Source: Macrostomum lignano
Lineage: Eukaryota
Direction of reading: 5' to 3'
Assembly: GCA_002269645.1 (NCBI GenBank)
Contig: NIVC01000201.1
Coordinates: forward strand, 124,001 to 188,000
Length of the DNA: 64,000 nucleotides
Part shown: piece after piece, positions 1,339-40,189 of the stretch
Numbering within the stretch: the first letter of the stretch is position 1
Layout of the letters: each line of letters starts with the position of its first letter
Notes under the pieces: generated by a model
The model's database searches: none
What the model was told of the DNA's origin: nothing
What the model saw: only the letters and a program-made list of their open reading frames with translations
Program-made: the position numbers and the translations under genes

Positions 1339-1695
1339 CTAATCCTTGACCGGATCCGGGAAGCCTTCGCTCTCATTGATGAGCGCCCTCTCCAGGATGA
1401 TCTTGCCCTCCTTGTACTGCTGGCTCTCCTCGGTGGCGAACTCGTACACCCAGCCCAGCTTGGTCTTGCACTTCCTGCAGCTCACATCGCGAACCATGTG
1501 CCTGCCTGTGAGCATCACCCGGTCCTGCAGCTCGCTAGTGTCCAGGTTCACCACCCGGTTGAACAGGAAGGCCCTACCGGTGGCACCGGTGAACCGGGTG
1601 CTAATGAGCTGCTGCCGGTTGGTGAGGGGACAGTCGCAGTTGGCGCAGCTGAACACCCGCTCGCCGCCCATGTGCTCAATGTGCAGGCGGCCCAT
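1339..1695 (-). CDS. YPEL5: Yippee-like protein 5 (CTLH/GID E3 ligase subunit), single coding exon, 118 aa
   Basis: [24 protein letters not shown]...[14 protein letters not shown]...[46 protein letters not shown] closely follows the YPEL5 sequence I recall, with both CxxC zinc pairs; candidate splice acceptor gctttcag at about 1728. Confidence 0.95.
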
Positions 1696-1974
1696 GCTGT
1701 AGCTAGCATTGAATTCTGAGGATTTACTGAAAGCGGCGCAGTACCCAGCGGGGCATGCATTTTAGTGACGTTTTAGCTGGTTTTGATAACTAAATTTTTG
1801 AAAAACTAGAACGTCTACTCATTTTTCAGTAGTTTGTTTGCGCACTGTCACTTAAATTTAATATGGCAGCTAAAATTTGCTTTCCTTCCTCGGGGTTTAC
1901 CGCCTGAGGAGTATATCGGATTAAGAATGAACAACAAGCATTTAACTCGATGTACACAAGTGACCGCAAGATCG

Positions 1975-3029: not shown

Positions 3030-3450
3030 TTCTAGACTGGGGATTAGGAAGGTTGAATCCCAAAACAGGGATTAGAGAGAATTATAATCCCAAAATGAAG
3101 ATTAGGGAGAATTAGAATCCCCAAATGAGGATCAGAGAGAATTAGAATCCCAAAATGAGGATTATGGAGAATTAGAAACCCAAAACAGGGATTAGATAGA
3201 ATTAGAATCCCAAAATGAGGATTAGGAAGAATTAAAATCCCAAAATGAGGATCAGAGAGAATTAGAATCCCAAATGAGGATCATGGAGAATTAGAACCCC
3301 AAAATGAGGATCAGAGATAATTAGAATCCCAAAACGAGGATTAGCGAGAATTGGAGGCTCAAAATGAGGATTACGGAAAATTACGAGATTGGGGATTAAA
3401 AGTTAGGTAGAATACCAAAATGGGGATAGGGGAGAATTAGAATCGCAGAA
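3030..3450. repeat. 30-bp minisatellite
   Basis: ggattagagagaattagaatcccaaaatga units. Confidence 0.9.
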
Positions 3451-3565: not shown

Positions 3566-5797
3566 TCAGCCGTGATCAGCCACAAACTTGACGCCCTCGT
3601 GGGTGACAGCGAACTGCCGGAGGTCGGCGGCCATCCGCAGGTCGATGCCGCTACCGTCCAGGGCCGCCTCGGCCTGCCGCCGCAGCAGCTCCACCGAGGC
3701 GTCGCTGACGGTGGGCCCGGCTCCGTCCGTGTAGCGCTGGCTGAAGTGAGTCAGCAGGAGGCATTCGGCACCGACTTGGCGGGCAAACTGGGCAGCCATG
3801 GCGGGCGTGGAGTGGCCCTTCTCCAAGCAGCTGTCAGTCAGCGAATTGTCCCCGGTGGCCTCGTGAACCACGCAGTCGACGCCGCGGCACATGTCGGCTG
3901 CCAGGTCGGAGTTGCAGGTGTCGCCGAAGACTGCCAGGCGAAGCGGCGGGGGCGGAGCAGCTGTCACCTGCGGCGGCATCCGGGTTTCCGGATCGGCTGA
4001 CTGGGTACGGACTTAAGGTCTCGGGGACTCAAGGACTCAGGGACTCAGGGACTCAAGGACTCAGACACTCAAGGACCCAGACACTCAAGGACTCAGACAC
4101 TCAAGGATTCAGACACTCAGGGACCCAGACACTCAAGGACTGACTATTGGACTGAGGTAACGCATCGAATCGAGGCTAGTAGGCTCAGCGACACGGATTT
4201 CAGACGACTCAGGGACTTCGGGTGAATCAGGGGCTTCAGGTGACTGGGGATTCAGGGGCCTCAGGTGACTGGGGATTCAGGGGCCTCAGGGGCCTCAGGT
4301 GACTGGGGATTCAGGGGCCTCAGGGGCCTCAGGTGACTGGGGATTCAGGGGCCTCAGGTGACTGGGGATTCAGGGGCCTCAGGTGACTGGGGATTCAGGT
4401 GCCTCAGGTGACTGGGATTCAGGGGCCTCAGGGGCCTCAGGGGCCTCAGGTGACTGGGGATTCAGGGGCCTCAGGTGACTGGAGATTCAGGGGCTTCAGG
4501 TGACTAGGGATTTAGGGGCTTCAGGTGACTCTGGGGATTCTGTAACTGTAAATAACTAAGGAAATTCAGGGACTTCAGGTGACTGGGGGGTCTCAGAGAC
4601 TGCAGATGAATCAGAGCTTTAACTAAGGGAATTTAGTTTCCAACTTAAGTTAGAGCCTAACCCAAGCCCATTCTCACTCACCTGCTCAGGCCTGATAACA
4701 GCCCCAGATCGGGTCGTCACGGTTCGGCCTCTCTTCAATTCGCCCAGCAGGGCAGATTCGCCAGATCTGGCCAGGCCCAGCTGGTATGCCAGCTCCGGCT
4801 GCAAGTGCCCGGTGGCCGGAGCCCGGGTGGCCAGCCTGTACCCCACACAGGGCACCCGGTGGCTGAGCGCGGCTGCCTGCACTGTGACCCCGCCGCTAGC
4901 GGCAGCGGCCTCCTGGTCGGACACGACAGTCCAAGTGCCGTCGGGTTGTCGGTCGGCATCGGCGATGTCAATCTCGTAGGGCAGGGCGGGCAGCAGGCCT
5001 TGGCGGCTGTCACTGGCGACTGCGGCAAGGATGGCCTCCATCTGGGCATTCTCGGGCGCCGGCATCAGCAGGGGGACGCCTGCGAGCTCTCGGATGGCGA
5101 GGCGAATCTGAGCAGTTCGGAGAGAGTTTTGAAAGTGAGGAGGATTGTAGCGGCTGCTTAAGCGACAGTTTGTCTGAGCACTGCGTGTTTAAACAGGCAA
5201 CGGATTGTGGATCAATGACGAGGGCCAGAGCCCAGTGGTCCAGCGCGGCGCTCTCGAGTGCCACCAGCCAGCCGCCTTGCGAGCCAACCCCTCAAACCAT
5301 ACAAGTTTCTACACCCGCAGTGGCAACTATCACAGAGAGGAGAGCAGAGAGGAGACAAGAGAGAAGGGGAGAGAGGAGATGAGGCAAGAGGAGACTCAGC
5401 CTAGAGTTGCTTTCGAGATGAAGCAGAGTACAGACTCGGGGGACCACCCCGACCTCACCCCGACCAGATCGCTTCTAGCATAAGCCAGACTCTGCCGCAG
5501 GAACTGCCGGGTACCGGGCGGCCCGCACACGGTGAGCACCGAGCCGGCCTCGCAGCGACCGCCGCCCAGGGTGCTGATAAGGCCCGGCAGGCCGAAGCTG
5601 TGATCGCCGTGCAGGTGTGTGATGAAGATGCGCGAGATTCGGCCCAGCTTCACCGGCGAGCGCATCAGCTGCACCTGAATAGACTCGCCGCAGTCGAACA
5701 GCCAGCAGTCGCCGTCGGCATGGAACCTGACGATCAGGCCGGAGGCGCAGCGGTGCGGCGACGGGTACGAGCTGGCTGTGCCCAGGAAGATCAGGTC
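3566..5797 (-). CDS. ELAC1: Short-form ribonuclease Z (RNase ZS, ELAC1-like metallo-beta-lactamase fold); exons 5797-5459, 5107-4682, 3967-3566; start codon not identified
   Basis: Motifs DLIFLGTASSYPSPHR, WLFDCGE, THLHGDH, HRVPCVGY, FGDT, HEAT, HST and THFSQRY. GT-AG junctions are all phase 0 (339+426+402 nt). The first exon begins ctgcag|GAC CTG ATC. Confidence 0.9.
4020..4590. repeat. Intronic minisatellites in RNase Z intron 2
   Basis: ggactcagacactcaa units followed by ggggcctcaggtgactggggattca units. Confidence 0.9.
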
Positions 5798-5814
5798 CTG
5801 CAGGGGCGGCGAGC

Positions 5815-6410
5815 TGGCTGAGGAGCGATTCTCATGGGGTGGCTGAGGGGCGATTCTCATGGGGTGGCTGAGGGGCGATTCTCATGGGGTGGCTGAGGGG
5901 CGATTCTCATGGGGTGGCTGAGGGGCGATTCTTATGGGGTGGCTGAGGGGCGATTCTTGTGGGGTGGCTGAGGGGCGATTCTTGTGGGGTGGTTGAGGGG
6001 CGATTCTTAGGGAGTGGCTGAGGGGCGATTCTTATGGAGTGGTTGAGGGGCGATTCTTAGGGAGTGGCTGAGGGGCGATTCTTATGGAGTGGTGGAGGAG
6101 CGATTCTTAGGGAGCGGCTGAGGGGCGATTCTTTTGGGGTGGCTGAGGGGCGATTCTTATGGAGTGGTGGAGGAGCGATTTTTCTGGGGTGGCTGAGGGG
6201 CGATTCTTTTGGGGTGGCTGAGGGGCGATTCTTTTGGGGTGGCTGAGGGGCGATTCTTATGGAGTGGTGGAGGAGCGATTCTTCTGGGGTGGCTGAGGGG
6301 CGATTCTTTTGGGGTGGCTGAGGGGCGATTCTTATGGGGTGGTGAGAGGCGATTCTCTAGGGTAACTGAGGGGCAATTCTCTGGGGTAACTGAGGGGCGA
6401 TTCTGTAGAA
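5815..6410. repeat. 25-bp minisatellite directly upstream of the RNase Z first acceptor
   Basis: ggggcgattcttatggggtggctga units. Confidence 0.93.
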
Positions 6411-7494: not shown

Positions 7495-7930
7495 TTTGTG
7501 GTGGGCGCTAGAGAGCCAGTCTACATTGGGGTGGTGGGTGCTGGGTGAGAGCCAGTGTACGTTGTGGTTTTGGGCGCTGGGTAAGAGCCAGTGTACATTG
7601 GGGTGGTGGGCGCTGGGTAAGAGCCAGTGTACATTGGGGTGGTGGGTGCTGGGTAAGAGCCAGTGTACATTGGGCTGGTGGGTGCTGGGTAAGAGCCAGT
7701 GTACATTGGGGTGGTGGGCGCTGGGTAAGAGTTAGTGTACATTGGGGTGGTGGGCACTGGGTAAGAGTTAGTGTACATTGGGCTGGTGGGTGCTGGGTAA
7801 GAGCCAGTGTACATTGGGGTGGTGGGCACTGGGTAAGAGTTAGTGTACATTGGGGTGGTGGGTGCTGGGTAAGAGTTAGTGTACGAGCTACATTGGGGTG
7901 GTGGGCGCTGGGTAAGAGTCAGTGTACATT
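7495..7930. repeat. 36-bp minisatellite
   Basis: gtacattggggtggtgggtgctgggtaagagccagt units. Confidence 0.93.
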
Positions 7931-8389
7931 AAAGTGGTGAAGGCAAGAGAAATGTGCATAGATTCATGGCGAATTCCTCCGATGTGTTAAGTTTATGAAG
8001 CTCCTAGAAAAAGGCTACCGGCAATCACAAACGCATTTATAAAGTTAAAAGTACAGAATTTGCAGCGGAAAATTGTGTTAAAATGATCTGGAAAGGCCAC
8101 ATAAAAGTAGTAGCTATCTACAAGAATCGAGCGGAAGTGCTGGGCAAAGTTCAATCAACCTTGACAATTAGGCATCCATGGCAAACAGCAAGCGATGGAA
8201 TCCAGTTGGTAGAATTAAAAAACGCAATCAGGTGTGCCAACCAATGCGTGAACAATCAGCGAATGCAGATGCTGGTGAATCAGACAGTTGATGACATGCC
8301 GGTGAGTAAAGGGACAATTCTCGAAAATTTCACTGAGCCAGTAGAAAGCTCAAGTATAGGTCAGCAGCAGACGGGTCGGTGGGTCAGCA

Positions 8390-8875
8390 TCACACACGGG
8401 TCGCGTCAGTAGGACAGCATCACACACGGGTTGGTGGGCCAGCGGGTCAGCAGCACGCGGGCTAGTGGGTCAGCTGGTCAGCACCACGCGGGTCAGTGGG
8501 TCAGCAGCACGCGGTCAGTAGCACGCGGGTCAGCAGACGCGGGTCAGTAGCACGCGGGTCAGCAGACGCGGGTCAGTAGCATGCGGGTCAGTAGCACGCG
8601 GGTCAGCAGACGCGGGTCAGTAGCATGCGGGTCAGCAGCACGCGGGTCAGCAGACGCGGGTCAGTAGCATGCGGGTCAGCAGCACGCGGGTCAGTGGGTT
8701 AGCAGCACGCGGGTCAGTGGGTCAGCAGCACGCGGGTCAGCAGCACGCGGGTCAGTGGGTCAGCAGCACGCGGGTCAGTAGCACGCGGGTCAGTGGGTCA
8801 GCAGACGCGGGTCAGTAGCACGCGGGTCAGCAGACGCGGGTCAGTAGCACGCGGGTCAGCAGCACGCGGGTCAGT
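8390..8875. repeat. 13-15-bp minisatellite
   Basis: gggtcagcagcacgc units. Confidence 0.92.
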
Positions 8876-8913
8876 AGGTCGTCACTGCGCAAGTACCCAA
8901 CACTGGCGGCCTC

Positions 8914-11900
8914 TCAAGCCGCTTTCTCAATCCGCAGCGGCTCCTCGCGGGCATCCTCGTACACCGCCGTCACGGACACGACCGACAGGCCAGCGTAGCC
9001 AACGAACTCGGCTTCGTCAGCGAAAACCCCCGACGGTAGCGGTGTGTTCAGCGGGAACACTCGCTCTCGAGCCCACGGCGCGTCGATAAGGGTCTGCAGG
9101 GCCCGCGAGATGACCACCATGTCGTGCATGCTGACCAGGCCGGACTCCACCAGCTCCATGGTGATGCCGTTGGCGCGGTCCTTGCCAACAGCGAAGTCGA
9201 AGCTGATGTCCTGCAGCTCGGCGAGCCCAGCGACCGGCTGCGAGCCGAGCGTTGACGAAGAGGCTCCGGAGGCCGGCGCCGTGGCGGCGTTGTTGCTGGA
9301 TCCGTCCAGAGCGGCGGCGGCGGCGGCGGAGGTCAGGGCGCCAATAATGGAGCCGCCGCCGGCGCCAGCGACCAGACTGTCGGGGCCGGAGAGAAGAGCG
9401 GCGGCGCCGGCCGGAGACGGGGCGTCGTCTTTGCGCTTGCGCAGGCGGAACTTCAGGTAGACGCCGCGGCAGCCCGGCCTGCCGGACAGGGCGGCGCGGA
9501 GCCACGGCAGCCGGCTGTCCGAGTTGTCCTGGTCGACCTCTGCCGCTAACTCTGACACAGGGGCGGCGGCCGTCTCGGTGGCGGCAGGAGCGGCGGCGGT
9601 GGCGCCCTCGGGAACTGCCACTCGTCCTCTTCGTCGTCCTCTTTGTCGTCATTGTCCTCGACGTCGCGTTGACTGATGGCGACAGGCGTTGCCGAGTCGA
9701 CGCTGTTGCTGTCGTTCTGCTGCTGAGAGCGCCGCTTGCCAGACAGCTGCGACAGGTGATGGTGCAGGTGGTGCGAGTCGCCGCTGAGCACGGCTCGGAC
9801 AATGTACTCCTTGTCCTTGGCTTTGGCCTGCGGGGCGGGCGAGTGGGTGACTTCTGTGTAGGGAGATACTGCCATAGGGATATTTCTATTGGGGATATTC
9901 ACATAGTTATGACATTTACGGAGGGAGATATTCACATGGGGAGATATTCACATGGGATATACTCACATAGGGATATACTCACATAGGGATATACTCACAT
10001 AGGGATATACTCACATAGGGATATACTCACATAGGGATATACTCAAACGGGGATAATATTGGGATAAAATCACATGGGGTGATATTCACATGGGGATATA
10101 CTCACATAGGGATATACTCACATAGGGATATACTCAAACGGGGAAAATATTTGGAAAAAATCACATGGGGTGATATTCACATGAGGAGATATTCACATGA
10201 GGAGATATTCACATGAGGAGATATTCACATGGGGAGATATTCACATGGGGAGATATTCACATGGGGATATACTCACATAGGAATATACTCACATGGGGAT
10301 ATACTCACATAGGGATATACTCACATAGGGATATACTCACATAGGGATATACTCAAACGGGGATAATATTGGGATAAAATCACATGGGGTGATATTCACA
10401 TGGGGATATACTCACATAGGGATATACTCACAGGGATATACTCACATAGGGATATATTCAAACGGGGATAATATTGGGATAAAATCACATTGGGTGATAT
10501 TCACATGGGGATATACTCACATAGGGATATAACTCACATAGGGATATACTCACATAGGGATATAACTCACATAGGGATATACTCACATAGGGATATACTC
10601 ACATAGGGAAATACATAGGGATATACTCACATAGGGATATAACTCACATAGGGATATAACTCACATAAGGATATACTCACATAGGGAAATACATAGGGAT
10701 ATACTCACATAGGGATATAACTCACATAGGGATATAACTCACATAGGGATATACTCACATAGGGAAATACTCACATAGGGATATACTCACATAGGGATAT
10801 AACTCACATAGGGATATACTCACATAGGGAAATACTCACATAGGGATATACTCACATAGGGAAATACTCACATGGGAATAATTTTGGGATAAAATCACAT
10901 GGGGATCTATTCACACGGGGAGATTTTCCCCCATAGAGTGTACCTACGGTGCTTCATCATCTAGCCTATAATCTCACCTTAATAAAGGGATGCTGCAGCA
11001 TCTGCTTGGCGCTCGGCCTCTCCGAGTCATTCCGTACCAGACAAGCGGACACGAACTTGCGAAACTTATGCCCGTAAGCGGAGTACTGGCCCGGCTTCTC
11101 CTCCACCGAGGCCAGGTTGGGTGGGTCATTGTTCAGCGTCAAGATGATCACCTTCAGTGGCGGGAATTTGGCGTAGGGTGCACTGCCGGTCACCAGCTCC
11201 AGAGCCGTAATGCCCAGACTCCAAATATCCGCCTTGGTAGTGTAGCCGTACTGGCGCTGCTCCATCACCTGGTGAGCGGATTTGCTTATTAAGCACTTTT
11301 ACTCTTCAATGCACTGCATTTTCCGACCTGCTAACAGTGAATATATACTTAAACTCTGTATAAATTACCTACTTATAATAGAAAAACAAGTAAATTATGC
11401 TTACATTACATAATATAGTTAGAAAATATATATAGATATTGTGACTGACCTACTGATAGTAGAAAAATACGCAAATAATGCAACTGATCTACTCATAGTG
11501 TAGAAAAATACGCTAATACTGCAACTGACCTGCTGGTAGTAGAAAAATACGTAAGTAATGCAACTGACCTACTGATAGTGTAAAAAATACGCTAATACTG
11601 CAACTGATCTACTGATAGTAAAAAAATACGTAAATATTGTAACTGACCATCTGATGGTAGAAAAAATACGTAAATAATGTAACTGACCCACTGATAGTAG
11701 AAAAATACGCAAATATTGTAATTGACCTACTGATAGTAGAAAAATACGCAAATATTGTAACTGACCCACTGATAGTAGAAAAATACGCAAATATTGTAAT
11801 TGACCTACTGATAGTAGAAAAATACGCAAATAATAAAACTGACCTACTGATAGTAGAAAAATACGCAAATAATGTAACTGACCTACTGATAGAAGAAAAA

Positions 11901-19263: not shown

Positions 19264-20894
19264 CACAGACAGACAGACAGACAGACAAACGGGCAGGCAG
19301 ACAGACAGACAGGCAGACAGACAAACAAACAACACAGACAGACAGAAACAGACACCCGACATGCACCTGTCCGCCATGTGAATGCTGAGCTTGTGCGCCA
19401 GCGCCCTGCACAGGCTGGTCTTGCCGGTGCCGGGCTCGCCGTGCAGCAGGATGAGGCGGTTGCAGTTCACCACGGCTGGGTCCACCCCGGCGTCGGCGAA
19501 GCGCAGGGTGGAGTGCGCGTAGCCCAGCAGGCGGGGCTTCACGTCGGCGCCGAACATGAGGCTCTCCCAGACGCCTTCGAGGCTGGCGGCGGGCAGCACC
19601 AGGGTAGCGGCGGCCGAGACCTCCTCGCCGTCGTGGTTGATCCGCTCGGTGGCCGGTTGCTCCTCTTCGCAGAGCTGGTAGAGAGCCACCTGGCGGCGGA
19701 GGACGGGATACGCAGTGGTCTTAAAAAATTGCTTGATGAAGTCTGTCCCACTAAGTTGGTCTTTTAAAGGGTTCTTTTTGAGTACTTCCATGGCCCTTGA
19801 GTCTAGAACCTGTCTGTTCCATTCAGTGCAGTCAAATTTGCCTGTCTTATTACGGGGTATTGCTGAGATGTCAAGGCTCATGGGGTATTGCTGAGATGCC
19901 AAGGCTTACTTGGGGAATTACTGAGATGTCAAGGCTTACTGGGGGGGGGGGTTGCTGAGATGTCAACGCTTACTGGGGGAATTACTGAGATGTAAACGCT
20001 TACGGGTTGCTGAGATGTCAAGGCTTACTAGGGTTAGGGTAATTGCTGAGATGCCAAGGCTGATATGGGTATTGCTGAGATGCCAAGGCCCATAGGGGTA
20101 TTGCTGAGATGCCAAGGCTCATAGGGGTATTGCTGAGATGCCAAGGCCCATAGGGCTATTGCTGAGATGCCAAGGCTCATAGGGGTATTGCTGAGATGCC
20201 AAGGCCCATAGGGCTATTGCTGAGATGCCAAGGCTCATAGGGGTATTGCTGAGATGCCAAGGCCCATAGGGCTATTGCTGAGATGCCAAGGCTCATAGGG
20301 GTATTGCTGAGATGCCAAGGCCCATAGGGCTATTGCTGAGATGCCAAGGACGATGGATGGTGCTGCTGAAATACCGAGGCTCAAAGGGGATGCTGTTTGT
20401 TATCTTGGACTAGAAAGCTGGATTTTAGGGCTGGTGCTCTTTTTCTTAAAATATTATTTTCTTCAAGAAACAAACAGTACTGACTATAAAAGGCTTTCTA
20501 TATGAAAAAAGTTATTAAGTTCTCTGTTGCATCTCTAACGCAGCTATAAGATTGCCAGTTCGCATGCTAAATGCTTCCGAGAAGCTGCTCGCACCTCAAG
20601 CTGACAGTCCCGCACTCTCAGCCGCCGTCCCGTGAGCTTATCGCTCAGGTCAACAAAGGTCAATGCCACAACTTCATTGTGCAGATCCTCAGTCTGGGGC
20701 ACACTGAGGCGCTCGCCAACCGTCACCCGATCAATGGACAAGCGGACAAACTGGACCACCGCCTGGACAATGGCAGCGACATCCTCGGAGCCCGCGCTGT
20801 TGGAGAACTGCGATCGACGCGCTTCAACAACCAGACGGTGCAACTGAGGCTGAGGTGTACGCTGCTGCGGAGTTACCGACGGCGTGGAGGTCAT
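15930..20894 (-). CDS. TRIP13: Pachytene checkpoint AAA+ ATPase TRIP13/Pch2; exons 20894-20595, 19689-19367, 18947-18621, 16359-15930 (459 aa; an upstream in-frame ATG at 21008 is possible)
   Basis: Walker [34 protein letters not shown], Walker [42 protein letters not shown]. The N-terminal [11 protein letters not shown]...EDVAAIV matches the TRIP13 N-domain pattern. Exons total 1380 nt with matching phases. Confidence 0.93.
16400..18480. repeat. About 30-bp minisatellite filling TRIP13 intron 3
   Basis: tgtgtcactgagtctgtgcccccccaatcc units. Confidence 0.96.
19040..19352. repeat. (GACA)n microsatellite in TRIP13 intron 2
   Basis: Direct reading of the sequence. Confidence 0.97.
19860..20360. 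repeat. 29-bp minisatellite in TRIP13 intron 1; related units recur at about 43170-43860
   Basis: gctgagatgccaaggctcataggggtatt units. Confidence 0.92.
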
Positions 20895-21119
20895 TGACCC
20901 CGCCACGGACTCGCCTGCCGGTGGCACAGGCTGACTGGGCACACCTGGCGGCGAGTGCAAAATCCCGCAGCTGGTGTTGACAAAATTCGACAGCAATTTG
21001 AGAGGCATTCGTGACAGCGGACTGACCCTTGGCACTGCCTTCATTACAACTGCCCTCATTACTGGCCATGTAAAAGCTTCCCAGTTCAAAAATGCTATAA
21101 TATACATGTACGAATGAGG

Positions 21120-24100
21120 AGGGGCGGTTGACCCAGAATGGGGCCAGTTGACACAGAATAGGGGCCAGTTGACACAGAATAGGGGCCAGTTGATACAGAA
21201 TGGGGGCCAGTTGACACAGAATAGGGGCCAGTTGAAACAGAATAGGGGCCAGTTCAACCCAGTTGAAACAGAATAGGGGCCAGTTGACACAGAATAGGGG
21301 CCAGTTGATACAGAATGGGGGCCAGTTGACACAGAATAGGGGCCAGTTGACACAGAATAGGGGCCAGTTGACACAGAATAGGGGCCAGTTGACACAGAAT
21401 GGGGGCCAGTTGATACAGAATGGGGGCCAGTTGACACAGAATATGGGCCAGTTGATACAGAATGGGGGCCAGTTGACACAGAATAGGGGCCAATTGACAC
21501 ATAATAGGGGCCAGTTGATACAGAATTGGAGCCAGTTGACACAGAATGGGGGCCAGTTGACACAGAATGGGAGGGCAGTTGACAAAGTGGGGAGGGAACC
21601 AGTTGACACAGAATGAGAGGAGGGCAGTTGACAAAGAGTGCGGAGGAGGGCAGTTGACACAGAAAGGGAGGGCAGTTGACAAAGTTGGGAGGGAACCAGT
21701 TGACACAGAATGAGAGGAGGGCAGTTGACAAAGTGGGGAGGGAATCAGTTGACACAGAATGAGAGGAGGGCAGTTGACACAGAGTGGGGGCAGTTGACAA
21801 AGAGTGGGGAGGAGGGCAGTTGACACAGAGTGGGGGCAGTTGACAAAGAGTGGGGAGGAGGGCAGTTGACACAGAGTGGGAGGGCAGTTGACAAAGAGTG
21901 GGGAGGAGGGCAGTTGACACAGAGTGGGAGGGCAGTTGACAAAGTGGGGAGGGAACCAGTTGACACAGAATGAGAGGAGGGCAGTTGACACAGAGTGGGG
22001 GCAGTTGACAAAGAGTGGGGAGGAGGGCAGTTGACACAGAGTGGGGGCAGTTGACACAGAGTGGGGGCAGTTGACAAAGAGTGGGGAGGAGGGCAGTTGA
22101 CACAGAGTGGGAGGGCAGTTGACACAGAGTGGGGAGGAGGGCAGTTGACACAGAGTGGGAGGGCAGTTGACACAGAGTGGGAGGGCAGTTGACAAAGAGT
22201 GGGGAGGAGGGCAGTTGACACAGAGTGGGAGGGCAGTTGACAAAGAGTGGGGAGGAGGGCAGTTGACAAAGAGTGGGGAGGAGGGCAGTTGACACAGAGT
22301 GGGAGGGCAGTTGACAAAGAGTGGGAGGGCAGTTCACAAAGAGTGGGGAGGAGGGCAGTTGACAAAGAGTGGGAGGGCAGTTTACAAAGAGTGGGGAGGA
22401 GGGCAGTTGACACAGAGTGGGAGGGCAGTTGACAAAGAGTGGGGAGGAGGGCAGTTGACAAAGAGTGGGGAGGAGGGCAGTTGACACAGAGTGGGAGGGC
22501 AGTTGACACAGAGTGGGAGGGCAGTTGACACAGAGTGGGAGGGCAGTTGACACAGAGTGGGGAGGAGGGCAGTTCACAAAGAGTGGGGAGGAGGGCAGTT
22601 GACACAGAGTGGGAGGGCAGTTGACACAGAGTGGGAGGGCAGTTGACACAGAGTGGGAGGGCAGTTGACACAGAGTGGGGAGGAGGGCAGTTGACACAGA
22701 GTGGGAGGGCAGTTCACAAAGAGTGGGGAGGAGGGCAGTTGACACAGAGTGGGAGGGCAGTTGACAAAGAGTGGGGAGGAGGGCAGTTCACAAAGAGTGG
22801 GGAGGAGGGCAGTTGAAACAGAGTGGGAGGGCAGTTGACACAGAGTGGGAGGGCAGTTGACACAGAGTGGGAGGGCAGTTGACAAAGAGTGGGAGGGCAG
22901 TTGACACAGAGTGGGAGGGCAGTTGACACAGAGTGGGGAGGAGGGCAGTTGACACAGAGTGGGAGGGCAGTTGACACAGAGTGGGAGGGCAGTTGACACA
23001 GAGTGGGAGGGCAGTTTACAAAGAGTGGGGAGGAGGGCAGTTCACAAAGAGTGGGGAGGAGGGCAGTTGACACAGAGTGGGAGGGCAGTTGACACAGAGT
23101 GGGAGGGCAGTTGACACAGAGTGGGAGGGCAGTTGACACAGAGTGGGGAGGAGGGCAGTTGACACAGAGTGGGAGGGCAGTTCACAAAGAGTGGGGAGGA
23201 GGGCAGTTGACACAGAGTGGGAGGGCAGTTGACACAGAGTGGGAGGGCAGTTCACAAAGAGTGGGGAGGAGGGCAGTTGACAAAGAGTGGGAGGGCAGTT
23301 GACAAAGAGTGGGGAGGAGGGCAGTTGACAAAGAGTGGGAGGGCAGTTTACAAAGAGTGGGGAGGAGGGCAGTTGACACAGAGTGGGAGGGCAGTTGACA
23401 AAGAGTGGGGAGGAGGGCAGTTGACACAGAGTGGGAGGGCAGTTTACAAAGAGTGGGGAGGAGGGCAGTTGACACAGAGTGGGAGGGCAGTTGACACAGA
23501 GTGGGAGGGCAGTTGACACAGAGTGGGAGGGCAGTTCACAAAGAGTGGGGAGGAGGGCAGTTGACAAAGAGTGGGAGGGCAGTTTACAAAGAGTGGGGAG
23601 GAGGGCAGTTGACACAGAGTGGGAGGGCAGTTGACACAGAGTGGGAGGGCAGTTGACACAGAGTGGGAGGGCAGTTGACACAGAGTGGGAGGGCAGTTCA
23701 CAAAGAGTGGGGAGGAGGGCAGTTGACAAAGAGTGGGAGGGCAGTTTACAAAGAGTGGGGAGGAGGGCAGTTGACAAAGAGTGGGAGGGCAGTTTACAAA
23801 GAGTGGGGAGGAGGGCAGTTGACACAGAGTGGGAGGGCAGTTGACACAGAGTGGGAGGGCAGTTGACACAGAGTGGGAGGGCAGTTCACAAAGAGTGGGG
23901 AGGAGGGCAGTTGACAAAGAGTGGGAGGGCAGTTTACAAAGAGTGGGGAGGAGGGCAGTTGACACAGAGTGGGAGGGCAGTTGACACAGAGTGGGAGGGC
24001 AGTTTACAAAGAGTGGGGAGGAGGGCAGTTGACACAGAGTGGGAGGGCAGTTGACACAGAGTGGGAGGGCAGTTGACACAGAGTGGGATTGCAGTTCACA

Positions 24101-27100
24101 AAGAGTGGGGAGGAGGGCAGTTGACAAAGAGTGGGAGGGCAGTTTACAAAGAGTGGGGAGGAGGGCAGTTGACACAGAGTGGGAGGGCAGTTGACACAGA
24201 GTGGGAGGGCAGTTGACACAGAGTGGGATTGCAGTTCACAAAGAGTGGGGAGGAGGGCAGTTGACAAAGAGTGGGAGGGCAGTTTACAAAGAGTGGGGAG
24301 GAGGGCAGTTGACACAGAGTGGGAGGGCAGTTCACAAAGAGTGGGGAGGAGGGCAGTTGACACAGAGTGGGAGGGCAGTTCACAAAGAGTGGGGAGGAGG
24401 GCAGTTGACAAAGAGTGGGAGGGCAGTTGACACAGAGTGGGAGGGCAGTTGACACAGAGTGGGAGGGCAGTTGACACAGAGTGGGAGGGCAGTTGACACA
24501 GAGTGGGAGCAGTTCACAAAGAGTGGGGAGGAGGGCAGTTGACACAGAGTGGGAGGGCAGTTCACAAAGAGTGGGGAGGAGGGCAGTTGACACAGAGTGG
24601 GAGGGCAGTTGACAAAGAGTGGGGAGGAGGGCAGTTCACAAAGAGTGGGGAGGAGGGCAGTTGACAAAGAGTGGGGAGGAGGGCAGTTCACAAAGAGTGG
24701 GGAGGAGGGCAGTTGACACAGAGTGGGAGGGCAGTTCACAAAGAGTGGGGAGGAGGGCAGTTGACACAGAGTGGGAGGGCAGTTGACACAGAGTGGGAGG
24801 GCAGTTGACACAGAGTGGGAGGGCAGTTCACAAAGAGTGGGGAGGAGGGCAGTTGACACAGAGTGGGAGGGCAGTTGACACAGAGTGGGGAGGAGGGCAG
24901 TTGACACAGAGTGGGGAGGAGGGCAGTTGACACAGAGTGGGAGGGCAGTTGACACAGAGTGGGAGGGCAGTTGACACAGAGTGGGAGGGCAGTTCACAAA
25001 GAGTGGGGAGGAGGGCAGTTGACACAGAGTGGGAGGGCAGTTCACAAAGAGTGGGGAGGAGGGCAGTTGACACAGAGTGGGAGGGCAGTTCACAAAGAGT
25101 GGGGAGGAGGGCAGTTGACAAAGAGTGGGAGGGCAGTTGACACAGAGTGGGAGGGCAGTTGACACAGAGTGGGAGGGCAGTTGACACAGAGTGGGAGGGC
25201 AGTTGACACAGAGTGGGAGCAGTTCACAAAGAGTGGGGAGGAGGGCAGTTGACACAGAGTGGGAGGGCAGTTGACAAAGAGTGGGGAGGAGGGCAGTTCA
25301 CAAAGAGTGGGGAGGAGGGCAGTTGACAAAGAGTGGGGAGGAGGGCAGTTCACAAAGAGTGGGGAGGAGGGCAGTTGACAAAGAGTGGGGAGGAGGGCAG
25401 TTCACAAAGAGTGGGGAGGAGGGCAGTTGACACAGAGTGGGAGGGCAGTTCACAAAGAGTGGGGAGGAGGGCAGTTGACACAGAGTGGGAGGGCAGTTGA
25501 CACAGAGTGGGAGGGCAGTTGACACAGAGTGGGAGGGCAGTTCACAAAGAGTGGGGAGGAGGGCAGTTGACACAGAGTGGGAGGGCAGTTGACACAGAGT
25601 GGGGAGGAGGGCAGTTGACACAGAGTGGGGAGGAGGGCAGTTGACACAGAGTGGGAGGGCAGTTGACACAGAGTGGGAGGGCAGTTGACACAGAGTGGGA
25701 GGGCAGTTCACAAAGAGTGGGGAGGAGGGCAGTTGACAAAGAGTGGGAGGGCAGTTTACAAAGAGTGGGGAGGAGGGCAGTTGACACAGAGTGGGGAGGA
25801 GGGCAGTTGACACAGAGTGGGAGGGCAGTTGACACAGAGTGGGGAGGAGGGCAGTTGACACAGAGTGGGAGGGCAGTTGACACAGAGTGGGGAGGAGGGC
25901 AGTTGACACAGAGTGGGAGGGCAGTTCACAAAGAGTGGGGAGGAGGGCAGTTGACACAGAGTGGGAGGGCAGTTGACACAGAGTGGGAGGGCAGTTCACA
26001 AAGAGTGGGGAGGAGGGCAGTTGACACAGAGTGGGAGGGCAGTTGACACAGAGTGGGGAGGAGGGCAGTTGACACAGAGTGGGAGGGCAGTTCACAAAGA
26101 GTGGGGAGGAGGGCAGTTGACACAGAGTGGGAGGGCAGTTGACACAGAGTGGGAGGGCAGTTCACAAAGAGTGGGGAGGAGGGCAGTTGACACAGAGTGG
26201 GAGGGCAGTTGACACAGAGTGGGAGGGCAGTTGACACAGAGTGGGAGGGCAGTTGACACAGAGTGGGAGGGCAGTTCACAAAGAGTGGGGAGGAGGGCAG
26301 TTGACACAGAGTGGGAGGGCAGTTCACAAAGAGTGGGGAGGAGGGCAGTTGACACAGAGTGGGAGGGCAGTTGACACAGAGTGGGAGGGCAGTTGACACA
26401 GAGTGGGAGGGCAGTTGACACAGAGTGGGAGGGCAGTTGACAAAGAGTGGGGAGAGGGCAGTTGACACAGAGTGGGAGGGCAGTTGACACAGAGTGGGAG
26501 GGCAGTTCACAAAGAGTGGGGAGGAGGGCAGTTGACACAGAGTGGGAGGGCAGTTCACAAAGAGTGGGGAGGAGGGAAGTTGACACAGAGTGGGAGGGCA
26601 GTTGACACAGAGTGGGAGGGCAGTTGACACAGAGTGGGAGGGCAGTTGACACAGAGTGGGAGGGCAGTTGACACAGAGTGGGAGGGCAGTTCACAAAGAG
26701 TGGGGAGGAGGGCAGTTGACACAGAGTGGGAGGGCAGTTCACAAAGAGTGGGGAGGAGGGCAGTTGACACAGAGTGGGAGGGCAGTTGACACAGAGTGGG
26801 AGGGCAGTTGACACAGAGTGGGAGGGCAGTTGACACAGAGTGGGAGGGCAGTTGACAAAGAGTGGGAGGAGGGCAGTTGACACAGAGTGGGAGGGCAGTT
26901 GACACAGAGTGGGAGGGCAGTTCACAAAGAGTGGGGAGGAGGGCAGTTGACACAGAGTGGGAGGGCAGTTCACAAAGAGTGGGGAGGAGGGCAGTTGACA
27001 CAGAGTGGGAGGGCAGTTGACACAGAGTGGGAGGGCAGTTGACACAGAGTGGGAGGGCAGTTGACACAGAGTGGGAGGGCAGTTGACACAGAGTGGGAGG

Positions 27101-29790
27101 GCAGTTCACAAAGAGTGGGGAGGAGGGCAGTTGACACAGAGTGGGAGGGCAGTTTACAAAGAGTAAGGAAGATGCAGTTGACACAGAGTGGGAGGGCAGT
27201 TTACAAAGAGTAAGGAAGATGCAGTTGACACAGAGTGGGAGGGCAGTTTACAAAGAGTAAGGAAGATGCAGTTGACACAGAGTGGGAGGGCAGTTTACAA
27301 AGAGTAAGGAAGATGCAGTTGACACAGAGTGGGAGGGCAGTTTACAAAGAGTAAGGAAGATGCAGTTGACACAGAGTGGGAGGGCAGTTGACACAGAGTG
27401 GGAGGGCAGTTCACAAAGAGTGGGGAGGAGGGCAGTTGACACAGAGTGGGAGGGCAGTTGACACAGAGTGGGAGGGCAGTTCACAAAGAGTGGGGAGGAG
27501 GGCAGTTGACACAGAGTGGGAGGGCAGTTCACAAAGAGTGGGGAGGAGGGCAGTTGACACAGAGTGGGAGGGCAGTTGACACAGAGTGGGAGGGCAGTTG
27601 ACACAGAGTGGGAGGGCAGTTGACACAGAGTGGGAGGGCAGTTGACAAAGAGTGGGGAGGAGGGCAGTTGACACAGAGTGGGAGGGCAGTTGACACAGAG
27701 TGGGAGGGCAGTTCACAAAGAGTGGGGAGGAGGGCAGTTGACACAGAGTGGGAGGGCAGTTCACAAAGAGTGGGGAGGAGGGAAGTTGACACAGAGTGGG
27801 AGGGCAGTTGACACAGAGTGGGAGGGCAGTTGACACAGAGTGGGAGGGCAGTTGACACAGAGTGGGAGGGCAGTTGACACAGAGTGGGAGGGCAGTTCAC
27901 AAAGAGTGGGGAGGAGGGCAGTTGACACAGAGTGGGAGGGCAGTTCACAAAGAGTGGGGAGGAGGGCAGTTGACACAGAGTGGGAGGGCAGTTGACACAG
28001 AGTGGGAGGGCAGTTGACACAGAGTGGGAGGGCAGTTGACACAGAGTGGGAGGGCAGTTGACAAAGAGTGGGGAGGAGGGCAGTTGACACAGAGTGGGAG
28101 GGCAGTTGACACAGAGTGGGAGGGCAGTTCACAAAGAGTGGGGAGGAGGGCAGTTGACACAGAGTGGGAGGGCAGTTCACAAAGAGTGGGGAGGAGGGCA
28201 GTTGACACAGAGTGGGAGGGCAGTTGACACAGAGTGGGAGGGCAGTTGACACAGAGTGGGAGGGCAGTTGACACAGAGTGGGAGGGCAGTTGACACAGAG
28301 TGGGAGGGCAGTTCACAAAGAGTGGGGAGGAGGGCAGTTGACACAGAGTGGGAGGGCAGTTTACAAAGAGTAAGGAAGATGCAGTTGACACAGAGTGGGA
28401 GGGCAGTTTACAAAGAGTAAGGAAGATGCAGTTGACACAGAGTGGGAGGGCAGTTTACAAAGAGTAAGGAAGATGCAGTTGACACAGAGTGGGAGGGCAG
28501 TTTACAAAGAGTAAGGAAGATGCAGTTGACACAGAGTGGGAGGGCAGTTTACAAAGAGTAAGGAAGATGCAGTTGACACAGAGTGGGAGGGCAGTTGACA
28601 CAGAGTGGGAGGGCAGTTCACAAAGAGTGGGGAGGAGGGCAGTTGACACAGAGTGGGAGGGCAGTTGACACAGAGTGGGAGGGCAGTTCACAAAGAGTGG
28701 GGAGGAGGGCAGTTGACACAGAGTGGGAGGGCAGTTCACAAAGAGTGGGGAGGAGGGCAGTTGACACAGAGTGGGAGGGCAGTTGACACAGAGTGGGAGG
28801 GCAGTTGACACAGAGTGGGAGGGCAGTTGACACAGAGTGGGAGGGCAGTTGACACAGAGTGGGAGGGCAGTTCACAAAGAGTGGGGAGGAGGGCAGTTGA
28901 CACAGAGTGGGAGGGCAGTTTACAAAGAGTAAGGAAGATGCAGTTGACACAGAGTGGGAGGGCAGTTTACAAAGAGTAAGGAAGATGCAGTTGACACAGA
29001 GTGGGAGGGCAGTTTACAAAGAGTAAGGAAGATGCAGTTGACACAGAGTGGGAGGGCAGTTTACAAAGAGTAAGGAAGATGCAGTTGACACAGAGTGGGA
29101 GGGCAGTTTACAAAGAGTAAGGAAGATGCAGTTGACACAGAGTGGGAGGGCAGTTTACAAAGAGTAAGGAAGATGCAGTTGACACAGAGTGGGAGGGCAG
29201 TTTACAAAGAGTAAGGAAGATGCAGTTGACACAGAGTGGGAGGGCAGTTTACAAAGAGTAAGGAAGATGCAGTTGACACAGAGTGGGAGGGCAGTTTACA
29301 AAGAGTAAGGAAGATGCAGTTGACACAGAGTGGGAGGGCAGTTTACAAAGAGTAAGGAAGATGCAGTTGACACAGAGTGGGAGGGCAGTTTACAAAGAGT
29401 AAGGAAGATGCAGTTGACACAGAGTGGGAGGGCAGTTTACAAAGAGTAAGGAAGATGCAGTTGACACAGAGTGGGAGGGCAGTTTACAAAGAGTAAGGAA
29501 GATGCAGTTGACACAGAGTGGGAGGGCAGTTTACAAAGAGTAAGGAAGATGCAGTTGACACAGAGTGGGAGGGCAGTTTACAAAGAGTAAGGAAGATGCA
29601 GTTGACACAGAGTGGGAGGGCAGTTTACAAAGAGTAAGGAAGATGCAGTTGACACAGAGTGGGAGGGCAGTTTACAAAGAGTAAGGAAGATGCAGTTGAC
29701 ACAGAGTGGGAGGGCAGTTCACAAAGAGTGGGGGGATGCAGTTGACACAGAATCGGAGGAGAGTAATTGACAGAGTAGGGAGGAAGCAAT
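21120..29790. repeat. 8.7-kb G-rich satellite (21-, 22-, 26- and 47-bp unit variants)
   Basis: Units GGGGCCAGTTGACACAGAATA, GGGAGGGCAGTTGACACAGAGT, GGGGAGGAGGGCAGTTCACAAAGAGT, and a 47-bp AAGGAAGATGCAGTT... dimer at 28920-29720. Confidence 0.97.
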
Positions 29791-38329: not shown

Positions 38330-40189
38330 TTAAGCCTCCTCGTCTGCAGGCTGCTGTACCTGCCAGACAGGCTGAGTGTGCAGATGGCTGCAGGCCCTTA
38401 GAAAAGCCGCAATTGAAAGTGAACTTTCTCTAAGATGTCTGCAATGCGTCTCGAAGGCAGCATTCACTCGTGCGTACCTGGCATGCACCTGCTGGTGATG
38501 AGTAACAGCCTGGCCCCCGTGAACTTGCTGCTGTAGCCGTTGCACCCATTCAGCATCACGCTCTAGCAGGTCCAGCAGAAGGTAGAAGTTCAGCGGTTTC
38601 TGTCCACGCTTGTTGAGTTGACCATGCCAGGCTTCTACGTCGTTGTTGGTCCTCTTGTACTGCTCGAAGACGCAGATAGCATCACGGTCCCAGACGGGAT
38701 GCTGCAGCCAGGTAGTGCGCACATACTCGGCTAGCTGTAGGAGTAGCTCATTACCTATTGCCAGTTGAATGCAGGCTGCCAGACCATCAAGCATACAAGC
38801 GGACGGCAAGCATGGAATCGAGAGAAGCATGCGTACAACCAACTTAACTGCTGGAACAGTGGAATACTGCACCTGAAGGCCAAGATTTTGGACACGCCTG
38901 AAGACAGCTTGACAATAATGGAAGAAGCAGCTGCGAACTTGCGCACCTGGATATACCAGCCGAATTGCTTGCCAAGCAGCAGCTTCAAAGTCACAGGTGA
39001 ACTTGATTGGCGCATTACCTGTTGACTCCCAAAGGCAACGAAAGCAGGCTTGATAATCAGCTTGAGCCTTACCGGACATCAAAAAGAAGGCAAGTGGTAC
39101 CAGCCTTTCTTGCCCATCAAAGCGAATCGCACCATGTACACTGTAAAGCTGTTTGAAAGGTGCCTTGACAATGCTAAAAGTTCTGTCGCACTTCAAGATT
39201 CGTCGGGTTGATAATAGTTCTCGCTGAGTTGTCGTCATGAAGACGAAGTGTCGCCCGTTTGTCTCAGGAACTGTCACATCCTGCAAATGAAACTGGGCAG
39301 GTACATGTCTAGGATCAACTTGGAAATGTACGTCAACAGGTTCCATAGGGCGATCTTTTTTGCGACTGTAATTAGCATTGCGACTCAATGACTCAATACT
39401 AAGCACCTCCTGCACTTCAGGTGAAACTTCTCTTACCTTCTCCTCCGCGATAATTCTAGCAGAGGTAAACAACATGCGCTTTGCTCCCTCCTTTACCTCC
39501 TTTGCTGCCTTTCTCTTCTAAGCTGGCCGATCAACTGGATCGCACGTGTGCGGAGCAAGGGCTTCTATGGTTCCATCAGCACGGCGGACTGCGGAGCCAT
39601 GACAGTGCAGTGATAAACGCTTAGTGCAGCGATAGTACGTGTTGCCATTTCGCCGCGTTTTTTCATCCATCAGATGGCCAAGGTCTCGTTGGGCATACTG
39701 CACTAGAAGATCTTTTCCGTGACTGCATCCTGCACCTGTAAGAATCTCAAAGGGCTGGGGAGGTGGGCTGCGGGGCGGTGCAAGCTCTGCTGGAGGAATT
39801 TGAATGGATTCTTCCAGAGCTGGATCAGGGTCATTGAAATCTGGATACTGGTAAAGAAAATTTTCTGCTTGTGCCGGAATCAAATGCACTGGTTCTGGAT
39901 TTTTAGCAGGCAGAGGAACAGCCGCTGATCCAGAATTCGGGGCTTGTACATGTACCACTACAGCATCTGCAGCTTGAGACACTGCTAAGTTACCTGCAAG
40001 AGCCCGTCTATTGCATTGATTGCAAAGCCAGAAAAACTAACCGACATTTCTCATTGCAGAATACTGATCGATTGTGACGCGACTATCACATGCACGGTGC
40101 TGCCAATTCAAGCATTGAGAACACTCAATTGCTTCTTGTCCATCGCAAACTGGCTGCAGACAGACCACACATGGATATGCGCCTGTCAT
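38330..40189 (-). pseudogene. MULE transposase with N-terminal PHD finger and FLYWCH-type zinc finger, interrupted by two in-frame TAG codons (40039-40037, 39520-39518)
   Basis: A single frame of 620 codons, translated by hand: MTGAYPCVVC..IECSQCLNWQHRAC..VG*FFWLCNQC; YYRCTKR..CHG..HTC; CDRTF (DGTF-like), CDFE, CFFH, TNNDVEAWH. Confidence 0.88.

What the first reader, a model, noticed from the sequence alone, without database searches (positions are those of the whole stretch)
5797..5860. RNase Z appears to lack its own start codon; the spliced-leader AUG may supply it
Seen: the conserved N-terminus starts immediately at a splice acceptor, ctgcag|GAC CTG ATC TTC CTG GGC (DLIFLG). I found no ATG|GT mini-exon (accat on the plus strand) in the 3.1 kb up to the kinase stop. 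The only nearby in-frame ATG (5860) lies inside a 25-bp minisatellite. Known: flatworm spliced leaders end in AUG, which can act as the initiator Met. Inference: SL-AUG + GAC yields M-D-L-I-F-L-G-T, exactly the register of ELAC1 (MDVTFLGT), so translation would depend on trans-splicing.
Basis: partly seen in the sequence, partly recalled or inferred. Interest (0 to 1): 0.75.

Follow-up and report, generated by a model that had tools for sequence, protein, structure and literature searches.

The report
RNase Z start codon from spliced leader
In this piece of the flatworm Macrostomum lignano genome, the tRNA-trimming enzyme RNase Z (ELAC1) has no usable start codon of its own and most likely borrows the AUG at the end of the trans-spliced leader, a trick already known in flatworms.

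Summary
On the minus strand a three-exon ELAC1-type RNase Z gene (5797..5459, 5107..4682, 3967..3566; 388 aa) begins at ctgcag|GAC CTG ATC TTC CTG GGC. There is no ATG at that position.

The window is Macrostomum lignano: a GenBank protein is 99% identical. The published spliced leader (SL) of this species ends in ATG, and CTGCAG fits its published trans-acceptor motif [T/C]TNCAG.

RNA-seq-based public models of three other copies, and of three copies of a diverged paralog, all start at this same codon. In the paralog an in-frame TGA lies 9 nt upstream of the acceptor, so no genomic ATG can serve there without splicing. In 106 of 117 ELAC1 homologs a Met sits exactly where the SL AUG would land.

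The in-frame ATG at 5860 is one of four ATG-bearing units of a 25-bp minisatellite. It is in frame only because of the repeat's phase, and upstream out-of-frame ATGs precede it.

I could not reach SL-bearing reads, so trans-splicing at this site is inferred, not shown.

The mechanism is well known in flatworms (Cheng et al. 2006). This is a new member of a known kind and of modest interest. A neighbouring gene (TRM13) looks the same.

The parts
5798..5803 (-). Splice acceptor CTGCAG immediately 5' of the first coding base. It is the inferred SL trans-splice acceptor.
   Evidence: Sequence. It matches the M. lignano trans-acceptor motif [T/C]TNCAG (PMC8629364). It is identical in three other genomic copies.
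5459..5797 (-). RNase Z (ELAC1-type) exon 1, 113 codons, from DLIFLGT to SDLVG. It has no ATG at its 5' end and contains the HxHxDH motif (HLHGDH, residues 61-66).
   Evidence: The donor is GTGAGG.
4682..5107 (-). RNase Z exon 2 (142 codons).
   Evidence: The joined product matches P0124 at 387 of 388 residues.
3566..3967 (-). RNase Z exon 3, including the TGA stop. It carries the GDT, HEAT, GHST and THFSQRY motifs.
5858..5860 (-). In-frame ATG 63 nt upstream of the acceptor, inside the minisatellite. It is the rival start and would add MRIAPQPPHENRSSASSPPLQ.
   Evidence: Neighbouring repeat units carry out-of-frame ATGs at -113, -88 and -38.
5815..6404 (.). 25-bp minisatellite (23.7 copies) abutting the acceptor. 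It is the inferred outron sequence that trans-splicing discards.
   Evidence: (TRF).
5663..5665 (-). First genome-encoded in-frame ATG downstream of the acceptor (Met45). It lies inside the conserved metallo-beta-lactamase core.
8914..8916 (-). Stop codon of the upstream same-strand OSR1/SPAK-type kinase gene, 3.1 kb from the RNase Z acceptor.

Best explanation
The gene is a Macrostomum lignano ELAC1-type tRNase Z. Its first genome-encoded codon (GAC, Asp) directly follows a trans-splice acceptor.

The proposed sequence of events is as follows. The primary transcript is made from a promoter of the gene's own or by read-through from the upstream kinase; which of the two is not known. It carries an outron that includes the 25-bp minisatellite. 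The 35-nt spliced leader (...TTGCAUG) is trans-spliced onto position 5797 and the outron is discarded. The leader then supplies the cap, a 32-nt 5' UTR and the initiator AUG. Translation reads M-D-L-I-F-L-G-T..., the normal ELAC1 N-terminus. Production of the active enzyme would therefore depend on trans-splicing.

**Shown here:** the gene structure, the acceptor, the frame, the absence of a suitable genomic ATG, the register in homologs, and the same architecture in other copies and in a paralog.

**Taken from the literature:** the SL sequence, the acceptor motif, and the use of the SL AUG as initiator in flatworms.

**Inferred:** that SL is actually added at this site, and that ribosomes start on its AUG.
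For: - **Species and gene.** The best hit is M. lignano PAA73292.1, 99% identical over 388 aa and labelled 'partial', starting at DLIFLGT. Other hits are ELAC1 proteins at 35-41% identity. Pfam finds Lactamase_B_2 and Lactamase_B, and HLHGDH is present.
- **Gene model.** The three-exon model matches UniProt model P0124 at 387 of 388 residues.
- **Leader and acceptor.** The published M. lignano SL, CGGTCTCTTACTGCGAAGACTCAATTTATTGCATG, ends in ATG. The published trans-acceptor motif is [T/C]TNCAG, and the site reads CTGCAG.
- **How the public annotation was made.** GenBank gene models were cut at RNA-seq peaks of SL-containing reads, then ORFs were called with TransDecoder (PMC5730564). In all three other ELAC1-A copies (L001-L003) the CDS begins exactly at this acceptor. 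This is so even though the frame is open for 84 nt upstream, so the underlying transcripts must begin at the acceptor.
- **Paralog.** ELAC1-B is 45% identical by BLASTP and 54% in the MAFFT alignment. In its three copies (L004-L006) the CDS begins at the homologous codon, AAG|GAT CTC GTA (DLVFLGT). An in-frame TGA lies at -9 and there is no in-frame ATG. Its flanks and intron positions are unrelated to those of ELAC1-A.
- **Register.** 106 of 117 homologs have a Met four residues before the F of FLGT, and for 15 of them it is residue 1, as in MDITFLGT.
- **No cis source.** There is no SL sequence in the window or the loci. No upstream ATG-exon has a consensus donor.
- **Neighbouring genes.** Neighbouring genes' CDS starts mostly lie at or near AG acceptors, and TRM13 likewise has no Met before its zinc finger.
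Against: - I saw no SL-bearing read, cDNA or peptide for this gene. No transcript-derived proteins with an SL-encoded prefix exist in the protein collection. The gene is not in the supplementary tables I could search.
- 'Partial' CDSs are common in this annotation and do not by themselves prove SL-AUG use. RRP40 and Yippee are annotated as partial yet have their own ATGs.
- An in-frame genomic ATG exists at -63 with an open frame, in all four copies.
- UniProt models of the same gene start 18 nt upstream of the acceptor (SSPPLQ...). That hints at another 5' end, just after a CCTCAG at -20.
- The -3 position of the SL AUG is a pyrimidine. This is a weak Kozak context, although +4 is G.
Confidence: 0.8

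Rival explanations
1. Translation starts at the genomic in-frame ATG at 5860-5858, in a transcript that keeps the last two repeat units. Such a transcript would be either not trans-spliced or trans-spliced further upstream. The protein would carry a 21-residue N-terminal extension (MRIAPQPPHENRSSASSPPLQ).
For: The frame is open from this ATG into exon 1, and the ATG is present in all four genomic copies.
Against: - The four copies are about 99% identical, so the ATG's presence in all of them says little. One of the few differences in this stretch changes an amino acid (S to P in L001).
- The ATG belongs to a 25-bp repeat whose units shift frame by one each time. One unit in three is therefore in frame by chance. 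The ATGs at -113 and -88 open 17-codon out-of-frame ORFs ahead of it, and the ATG at -38 opens another behind it.
- The extension has no counterpart in the paralog, which has a stop at -9, or in the great majority of the 117 homologs.
- RNA-seq-based models start at the acceptor rather than at this ATG, although TransDecoder would have taken a complete ORF had the transcript contained it.
Confidence: 0.08
2. A cis-spliced upstream exon, missed by the annotations and lying in the 3.1-kb spacer or beyond, supplies the ATG or a 5' UTR plus ATG. The acceptor at 5798 would then be an ordinary intron end.
For: Parasitic flatworms share many acceptors between cis- and trans-splicing (PMC12582326). 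Sixteen ATG...|GT phase-0 candidates exist in the spacer.
Against: - None of the 16 candidates has the GT[AG]AG donor consensus, and several lie inside minisatellites.
- ATG|GT is absent.
- None of six independently annotated loci has such an exon, and two different annotation efforts lack a Met.
- The paralog's upstream region is unrelated, so no conserved upstream exon exists.
Confidence: 0.07
3. The missing start is an artefact or a defect. Either the models are 5'-truncated, or this copy is a decaying duplicate in a polyploid genome, or initiation is at Met45 or at a near-cognate codon such as the in-frame CTG at -6.
For: M. lignano carries many near-identical duplicates (PMC5730564). An annotated frameshifted isoform exists (P0121 and P0125).
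Against: - The ORF and all catalytic motifs are intact in the window and in the other copies.
- The 5' boundary coincides with an AG acceptor at the same codon in two paralogs with unrelated flanks.
- Met45 would remove the conserved FLGT strand and part of the core.
- The paralog has no comparable near-cognate codon in frame before its stop.
Confidence: 0.05

Closest known systems
Flatworm SL 3'-terminal AUG used as initiator methionine (Cheng, Cohen, Ndegwa & Davis 2006, J Biol Chem 281:733), later called 'slORFs' (slORFfinder, PMC9851317)
   Same: The spliced leader ends in AUG. The acceptor lies directly before the second codon of a conserved protein, and there is no genomic in-frame AUG at the right place. 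The reading frame and the protein N-terminus are completed only after trans-splicing. [quoted passage not shown]
   Different: The species is a free-living macrostomid, not a schistosome. The M. lignano trans-splicing paper I read does not discuss SL-AUG initiation. The gene, ELAC1, is not known to me as a described case, and two diverged paralogs share the arrangement. Trans-splicing and initiation are not experimentally shown here.
ELAC1 / short-form tRNase Z (metallo-beta-lactamase superfamily)
   Same: The protein is 35-41% identical to animal ELAC1 over more than 90% of its length. It has Pfam Lactamase_B_2 and Lactamase_B, and the HxHxDH, GDT, HEAT and GHST motifs. The segment that aligns to the flexible arm is present.
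   Different: The initiator Met is not encoded next to the gene. The introns and the upstream region are filled with minisatellites.
[quoted passage not shown] 2017, PMC5730564; Ustyantsev & Berezikov 2021, PMC8629364)
   Same: The acceptor motif fits. The gene is conserved and sits in a same-strand cluster (TRIP13-like, OSR1 kinase, RNase Z, Yippee, TRM13). The intergenic spacer is repeat-rich. The annotation name of one copy shares its transcriptional-unit prefix (Mlig034454) with TRIP13 genes tagged TRANSSPLICED.
   Different: The spacer to the kinase is 3.1 kb. About 1.5 kb of it is tandem repeat, which leaves more than the 1-kb repeat-adjusted threshold those authors used for operons. Operon membership is therefore open.

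Membership tests
SL-AUG-initiated ORF of flatworms (Cheng et al. 2006 type) | The organism's spliced leader ends in AUG at its 3' end | not testable with these tools
   No SL RNA gene lies in the window or the fetched loci. The published M. lignano SL ends in ...TTGCATG (PMC8629364).
SL-AUG-initiated ORF of flatworms (Cheng et al. 2006 type) | The mRNA's 5' end is an SL trans-splice acceptor, shown by SL-bearing reads | tested here: inconclusive
   CTGCAG matches the published motif. The CDSs of six SL-peak-guided gene models start at this codon. No reads or 'TRANSSPLICED' tag for this gene could be retrieved.
SL-AUG-initiated ORF of flatworms (Cheng et al. 2006 type) | The SL AUG is in frame with the main ORF, with no intervening stop | tested here: met
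   ATG|GAC CTG ATC... is in phase 0 and reads directly into the 388-codon ORF.
SL-AUG-initiated ORF of flatworms (Cheng et al. 2006 type) | No genome-encoded AUG can give the conserved N-terminus | tested here: met
   The first Met downstream of the acceptor is residue 45, inside the core. The upstream ATG at -63 is repeat-borne and adds non-homologous residues. The paralog has a stop at -9. Homologs place a Met exactly at this position in 106 of 117 cases.
SL-AUG-initiated ORF of flatworms (Cheng et al. 2006 type) | Translation actually initiates on the SL AUG | not testable with these tools
   This needs ribosome profiling, N-terminal proteomics or reporter assays.
tRNase Z short form (ELAC1) | Metallo-beta-lactamase fold with the HxHxDH motif and the downstream D/H metal ligands | tested here: met
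   Pfam PF12706 at 4.6e-15 and PF00753 at 1.7e-08. HLHGDH is at residues 61-66. GDT, HEAT and GHST are invariant in the alignment.
tRNase Z short form (ELAC1) | Full-length similarity to characterised ELAC1 orthologs | tested here: met
   35-41% identity over 94-97% of the query to vertebrate and invertebrate ELAC1, with E-values down to 5e-64.
tRNase Z short form (ELAC1) | tRNA 3'-trailer endonuclease activity | not testable with these tools
   This needs a biochemical assay.

The most novel reading that the evidence does not exclude
Loss of the gene's own start codon may be old and obligate. Two ELAC1 paralogs have diverged to about 45-54% identity, with unrelated flanks and different intron positions. 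Both begin at a splice acceptor placed exactly before codon 2. If this is inherited, a core tRNA-processing enzyme has depended entirely on SL trans-splicing since before the duplication.

In addition, the nearby CCTCAG acceptor at -20 is where the UniProt models appear to start. Splicing the SL there would put its AUG out of frame (ATG CCA GCT ... TGA). Acceptor choice could then act as an on/off switch for translation.
Probability: 0.25. Interest if true: 0.45.

Novelty: new member of a known kind. Interest (0 to 1): 0.27.

Why it matters
The finding has three practical consequences.

- **Annotation.** Gene predictors and databases label this protein, its paralog and probably many other M. 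lignano proteins as 'partial' or give them wrong N-termini, because the start codon is not in the locus. Recognising SL-AUG initiation would fix those models.
- **Biology.** It would make an essential tRNA 3'-end processing enzyme strictly dependent on trans-splicing. It also adds a free-living, transgenesis-capable flatworm to the species in which SL-AUG initiation can be tested directly.
- **Novelty.** It does not change what is known about the mechanism, which was established in schistosomes in 2006.

Tried and rejected
**Searches for direct evidence, all negative**
- I looked for transcript-derived proteins carrying the SL-encoded prefix (VSYCEDSIYCM + exon 1) in the 5.8-billion-protein collection. 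No M. lignano transcript fragments turned up. The 90% clusters of both paralogs contain only genome-annotation entries.
- I looked for a published 'TRANSSPLICED' tag for Mlig001820.g2, Mlig034454.g7, Mlig031651.g3 and the other copies. I searched the supplements of PMC5816591 (file truncated; only neighbouring genes found), PMC5730564, PMC12801592 (none held) and PMC7336406, and the full text of the library. Nothing was found.
- I searched for the SL sequence in the window and the loci, in case of a nearby cis source. There was none.

**Arguments I dropped**
- I first considered reading 'g2' or 'g7' in the locus tags as the gene's position in an operon. I rejected this because the prefixes are shared by 95%-identity clusters of transcriptional units, and copies of one gene get different g numbers.
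- I considered treating the GenBank 'partial' flag as evidence. I rejected this because neighbouring genes with their own ATGs are also annotated from the transcript's 5' end.
- I considered using conservation of the -63 ATG across copies as evidence for the rival start. I rejected this because the copies are near-identical recent duplicates.
- Shared intron positions between the paralogs would have been evidence for common ancestry of the gene structure. The introns are not shared.
Full report
**What is in the sequence.** The feature lies on the minus strand. Read 5'->3' on that strand, the sequence is ...CATGAGAATCGCTCCTCAGCCAGCTCGCCGCCCCTGCAG|GACCTGATCTTCCTGGGCACAGCC..., with the first exon base at window position 5797. 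The coding sequence has three exons with canonical GT..AG borders.

| Exon | Window coordinates (minus strand) |
|---|---|
| 1 | 5797..5459 |
| 2 | 5107..4682 |
| 3 | 3967..3566, stop included |

Joined, these give a 388-residue product. It matches one UniProt model of the same species at 387 of 388 residues. It differs from the GenBank protein PAA73292.1 at 5 residues. Pfam assigns it to the metallo-beta-lactamase families. It carries HLHGDH and the downstream GDT, HEAT and GHST motifs. Its best non-self hits are animal ELAC1 proteins at 35-41% identity over almost the full length. It is therefore a short-form tRNase Z.

**Species.** The near-identical hits are all Macrostomum lignano. [quoted passage not shown]

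- The stop of the upstream same-strand gene is at 8916-8914, 3.1 kb away. That gene is an OSR1/SPAK-type kinase.
- ATG|GT, which is ACCAT on the plus strand, is indeed absent from the spacer. Only about 1.7 occurrences were expected, so this is weak evidence on its own.
- I widened the test to any ATG-initiated stretch ending in phase 0 at a GT. There are 16 candidates, several inside minisatellites. None has the GT[AG]AG donor that dominates in this species.
- The in-frame ATG at 5860-5858 lies in a 25-bp minisatellite (5815-6404, 23.7 copies).
- Because 25 is not a multiple of 3, successive units rotate through the three frames. The four ATG-bearing units sit at -113, -88, -63 and -38. Only the one at -63 is in frame.
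- The TGA of the -88 unit is the in-frame stop at -87. The -113 and -88 ATGs open 17-codon ORFs ahead of the in-frame ATG.

**Comparative evidence.** I fetched three further genomic copies of this gene (L001-L003) and three copies of a paralog (L004-L006) from the GenBank assembly. The paralog is 45% identical by BLASTP and 54% in the MAFFT alignment.
- According to the authors, those gene models were made by mapping RNA-seq reads that carried the leader, cutting transcriptional units at the resulting peaks, and calling ORFs with TransDecoder (PMC5730564).
- In all three copies of this gene the CDS starts at the same G of GAC. This is so although the frame is open for 84 nt upstream and contains an ATG. 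An ORF caller would have used that ATG if the transcript included it.
- In all three paralog copies the CDS starts at the homologous codon, ...AAAAATGATTCAAG|GAT CTC GTA TTC CTC GGC (DLVFLGT).
- There an in-frame TGA lies 9 nt upstream, and the only nearby ATG is out of frame. The paralog cannot use a genomic ATG without splicing.
- The two paralogs have unrelated upstream sequence: GC-rich minisatellite in one and A-rich unique sequence in the other. Their intron positions also differ.
- The one boundary they share is the acceptor before codon 'D'.

**Register.** Among 117 ELAC1 homologs with a recognisable FLGT motif and at least four residues before it, 106 have a Met exactly four residues before the F. 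In 15 it is residue 1 (MDITFLGT, MELTFLGT, MQVVFLGT). In most vertebrates it is the second Met of MSMDxTFLGT. Placing an AUG directly before GAC reproduces that N-terminus.

**The leader.** The published M. lignano SL is CGGTCTCTTACTGCGAAGACTCAATTTATTGCATG. The top motif at its trans-splice acceptors is [T/C]TNCAG (PMC8629364), and the site here reads CTGCAG. The SL is not encoded in the window or the loci, so it must come in trans. All reported flatworm leaders end in AUG. The SL AUG has been shown to serve as initiator in Schistosoma mansoni: Cheng et al. 2006, as summarised in PMC9851317 and PMC12582326.

**Most likely mechanism.** A precursor that contains the minisatellite outron is trans-spliced at 5798|5797. 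The leader supplies the cap, the 5' UTR and the AUG, and translation yields MDLIFLGT.... I put this at about 0.8.
- Shown here: the structure, the frame and the comparative pattern.
- From the literature: the SL sequence, the acceptor motif and the precedent for SL-AUG initiation.
- Inferred: that SL is added at this site and that ribosomes start on its AUG.

**Rivals.**
- Start at the repeat ATG (about 0.08). The ATG is in frame by the chance phase of the repeat and is preceded by other AUGs. The extension it would add is absent from the paralog and from the great majority of homologs, and the RNA-based models do not include it.
- A missed cis exon (about 0.07). There is no consensus donor, no such exon in six loci or in two annotation efforts, and no conserved upstream sequence.
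- Artefact, decay, or an internal or near-cognate start (about 0.05). The ORF and motifs are intact, and the boundary sits at the same codon in two paralogs.

**Limits.**
- I could not reach reads. No transcript-derived proteins of this gene are in the protein collection.
- The supplementary tables that carry 'TRANSSPLICED' tags are truncated or do not list this gene.
- The 'partial' flag is not evidence in itself. The neighbouring RRP40 (CAG|CAATCCACAATGGAA) and Yippee models are also annotated from the transcript's 5' end, although both have their own ATGs.
- The g-numbers in locus tags do not give the order of genes within an operon.
- UniProt models of this gene begin SSPPLQDLIF. That corresponds to a 5' end just after a CCTCAG at -20. 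SL added there would be out of frame (and the sequence). I cannot tell whether this is a real alternative acceptor.

**Context and novelty.**
- The window's minus strand carries, in order, a TRIP13-like AAA ATPase, the OSR1 kinase, RNase Z and Yippee. TRM13 follows in the other copies.
- TRM13 also starts at CTGCAG|GAG and has no Met before its CCCH zinc finger. SL-AUG dependence is therefore probably common in this genome.
- The mechanism has been known in flatworms since 2006. The M. lignano trans-splicing paper I read does not discuss it.
- This is a new member of a known kind. It is useful for annotation and testable in a transgenic model, but it would not surprise a specialist.

Noticed in passing
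window 1693-1730, minus strand: The Yippee gene's annotated 5' end in the other copies lies 1-4 nt after the acceptor tttcag|TAAATCC (1727/1726). An SL AUG spliced there would be followed at once by TAA, an AUG-stop, and the gene's own ATG follows at 1695-1693. This is the opposite solution to the SL AUG from the one seen in RNase Z.
   Followed up: partly
L001 13004-13600 (also L002 13714); outside the window: TRM13, two genes downstream of RNase Z, starts at CTGCAG|GAGACG. It has no Met before its CCCH zinc finger; the first Met is near residue 160. It is a second candidate for SL-AUG-dependent initiation. In L002 the same site reads CTGCTG, so the acceptor AG is lost in that copy.
   Followed up: partly
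L004-L006 6001-8527 (ELAC1-B paralog): The paralog (313 aa) lacks about 54 residues that align with the flexible-arm segment of ELAC1 (GKL...PGPLY...). Its RNA substrates may therefore differ. It has two exons, against three in the window's gene.
   Followed up: no
window 5815-5820 region, minus strand (CCTCAG ending 20 nt upstream of 5797): UniProt/WormBase models P0123-P0125 begin SSPPLQ, 18 nt upstream of the acceptor. This fits a transcript 5' end right after CCTCAG at -20. SL added there would read ATG CCA GCT CGC CGC CCC TGC AGG ACC TGA, which is out of frame.
   Followed up: no
window about 3900-3967, minus strand; proteins P0121 and P0125: Two public models use an alternative acceptor inside exon 3. 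It shifts the frame and ends after 285 aa (...PEQSSATPATPTWQPTCAAASTAWFTRPPGTIR). The product lacks the C-terminal catalytic motifs.
   Followed up: no
window 4009-4540, 5333-5379, 7498-7930, 8371-8880, 3055-3373: Both introns of the RNase Z gene and the spacers on either side of it carry tandem repeats with periods of 12-59 bp. They include another 25-bp family in intron 2.
   Followed up: partly
window about 20500-29000: This is a very large tandem-repeat block with strong GC skew (about 0.5-0.6) and AT skew. It yields long spurious ORFs on the minus strand.
   Followed up: no
window 38333-39517, minus strand: A 395-codon ORF has a MULE transposase domain (Pfam PF10551, 8.6e-12). It sits in an AT-rich stretch.
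   Followed up: no
L004-L006, RRP40 gene start (e.g. L005 10283): The acceptor reads CCCGCAG|CAA TCC ACA ATG GAA. The SL AUG would be in frame three codons ahead of the gene's own ATG. Either start would give nearly the same protein (MQSTMEV... or MEV...).
   Followed up: no
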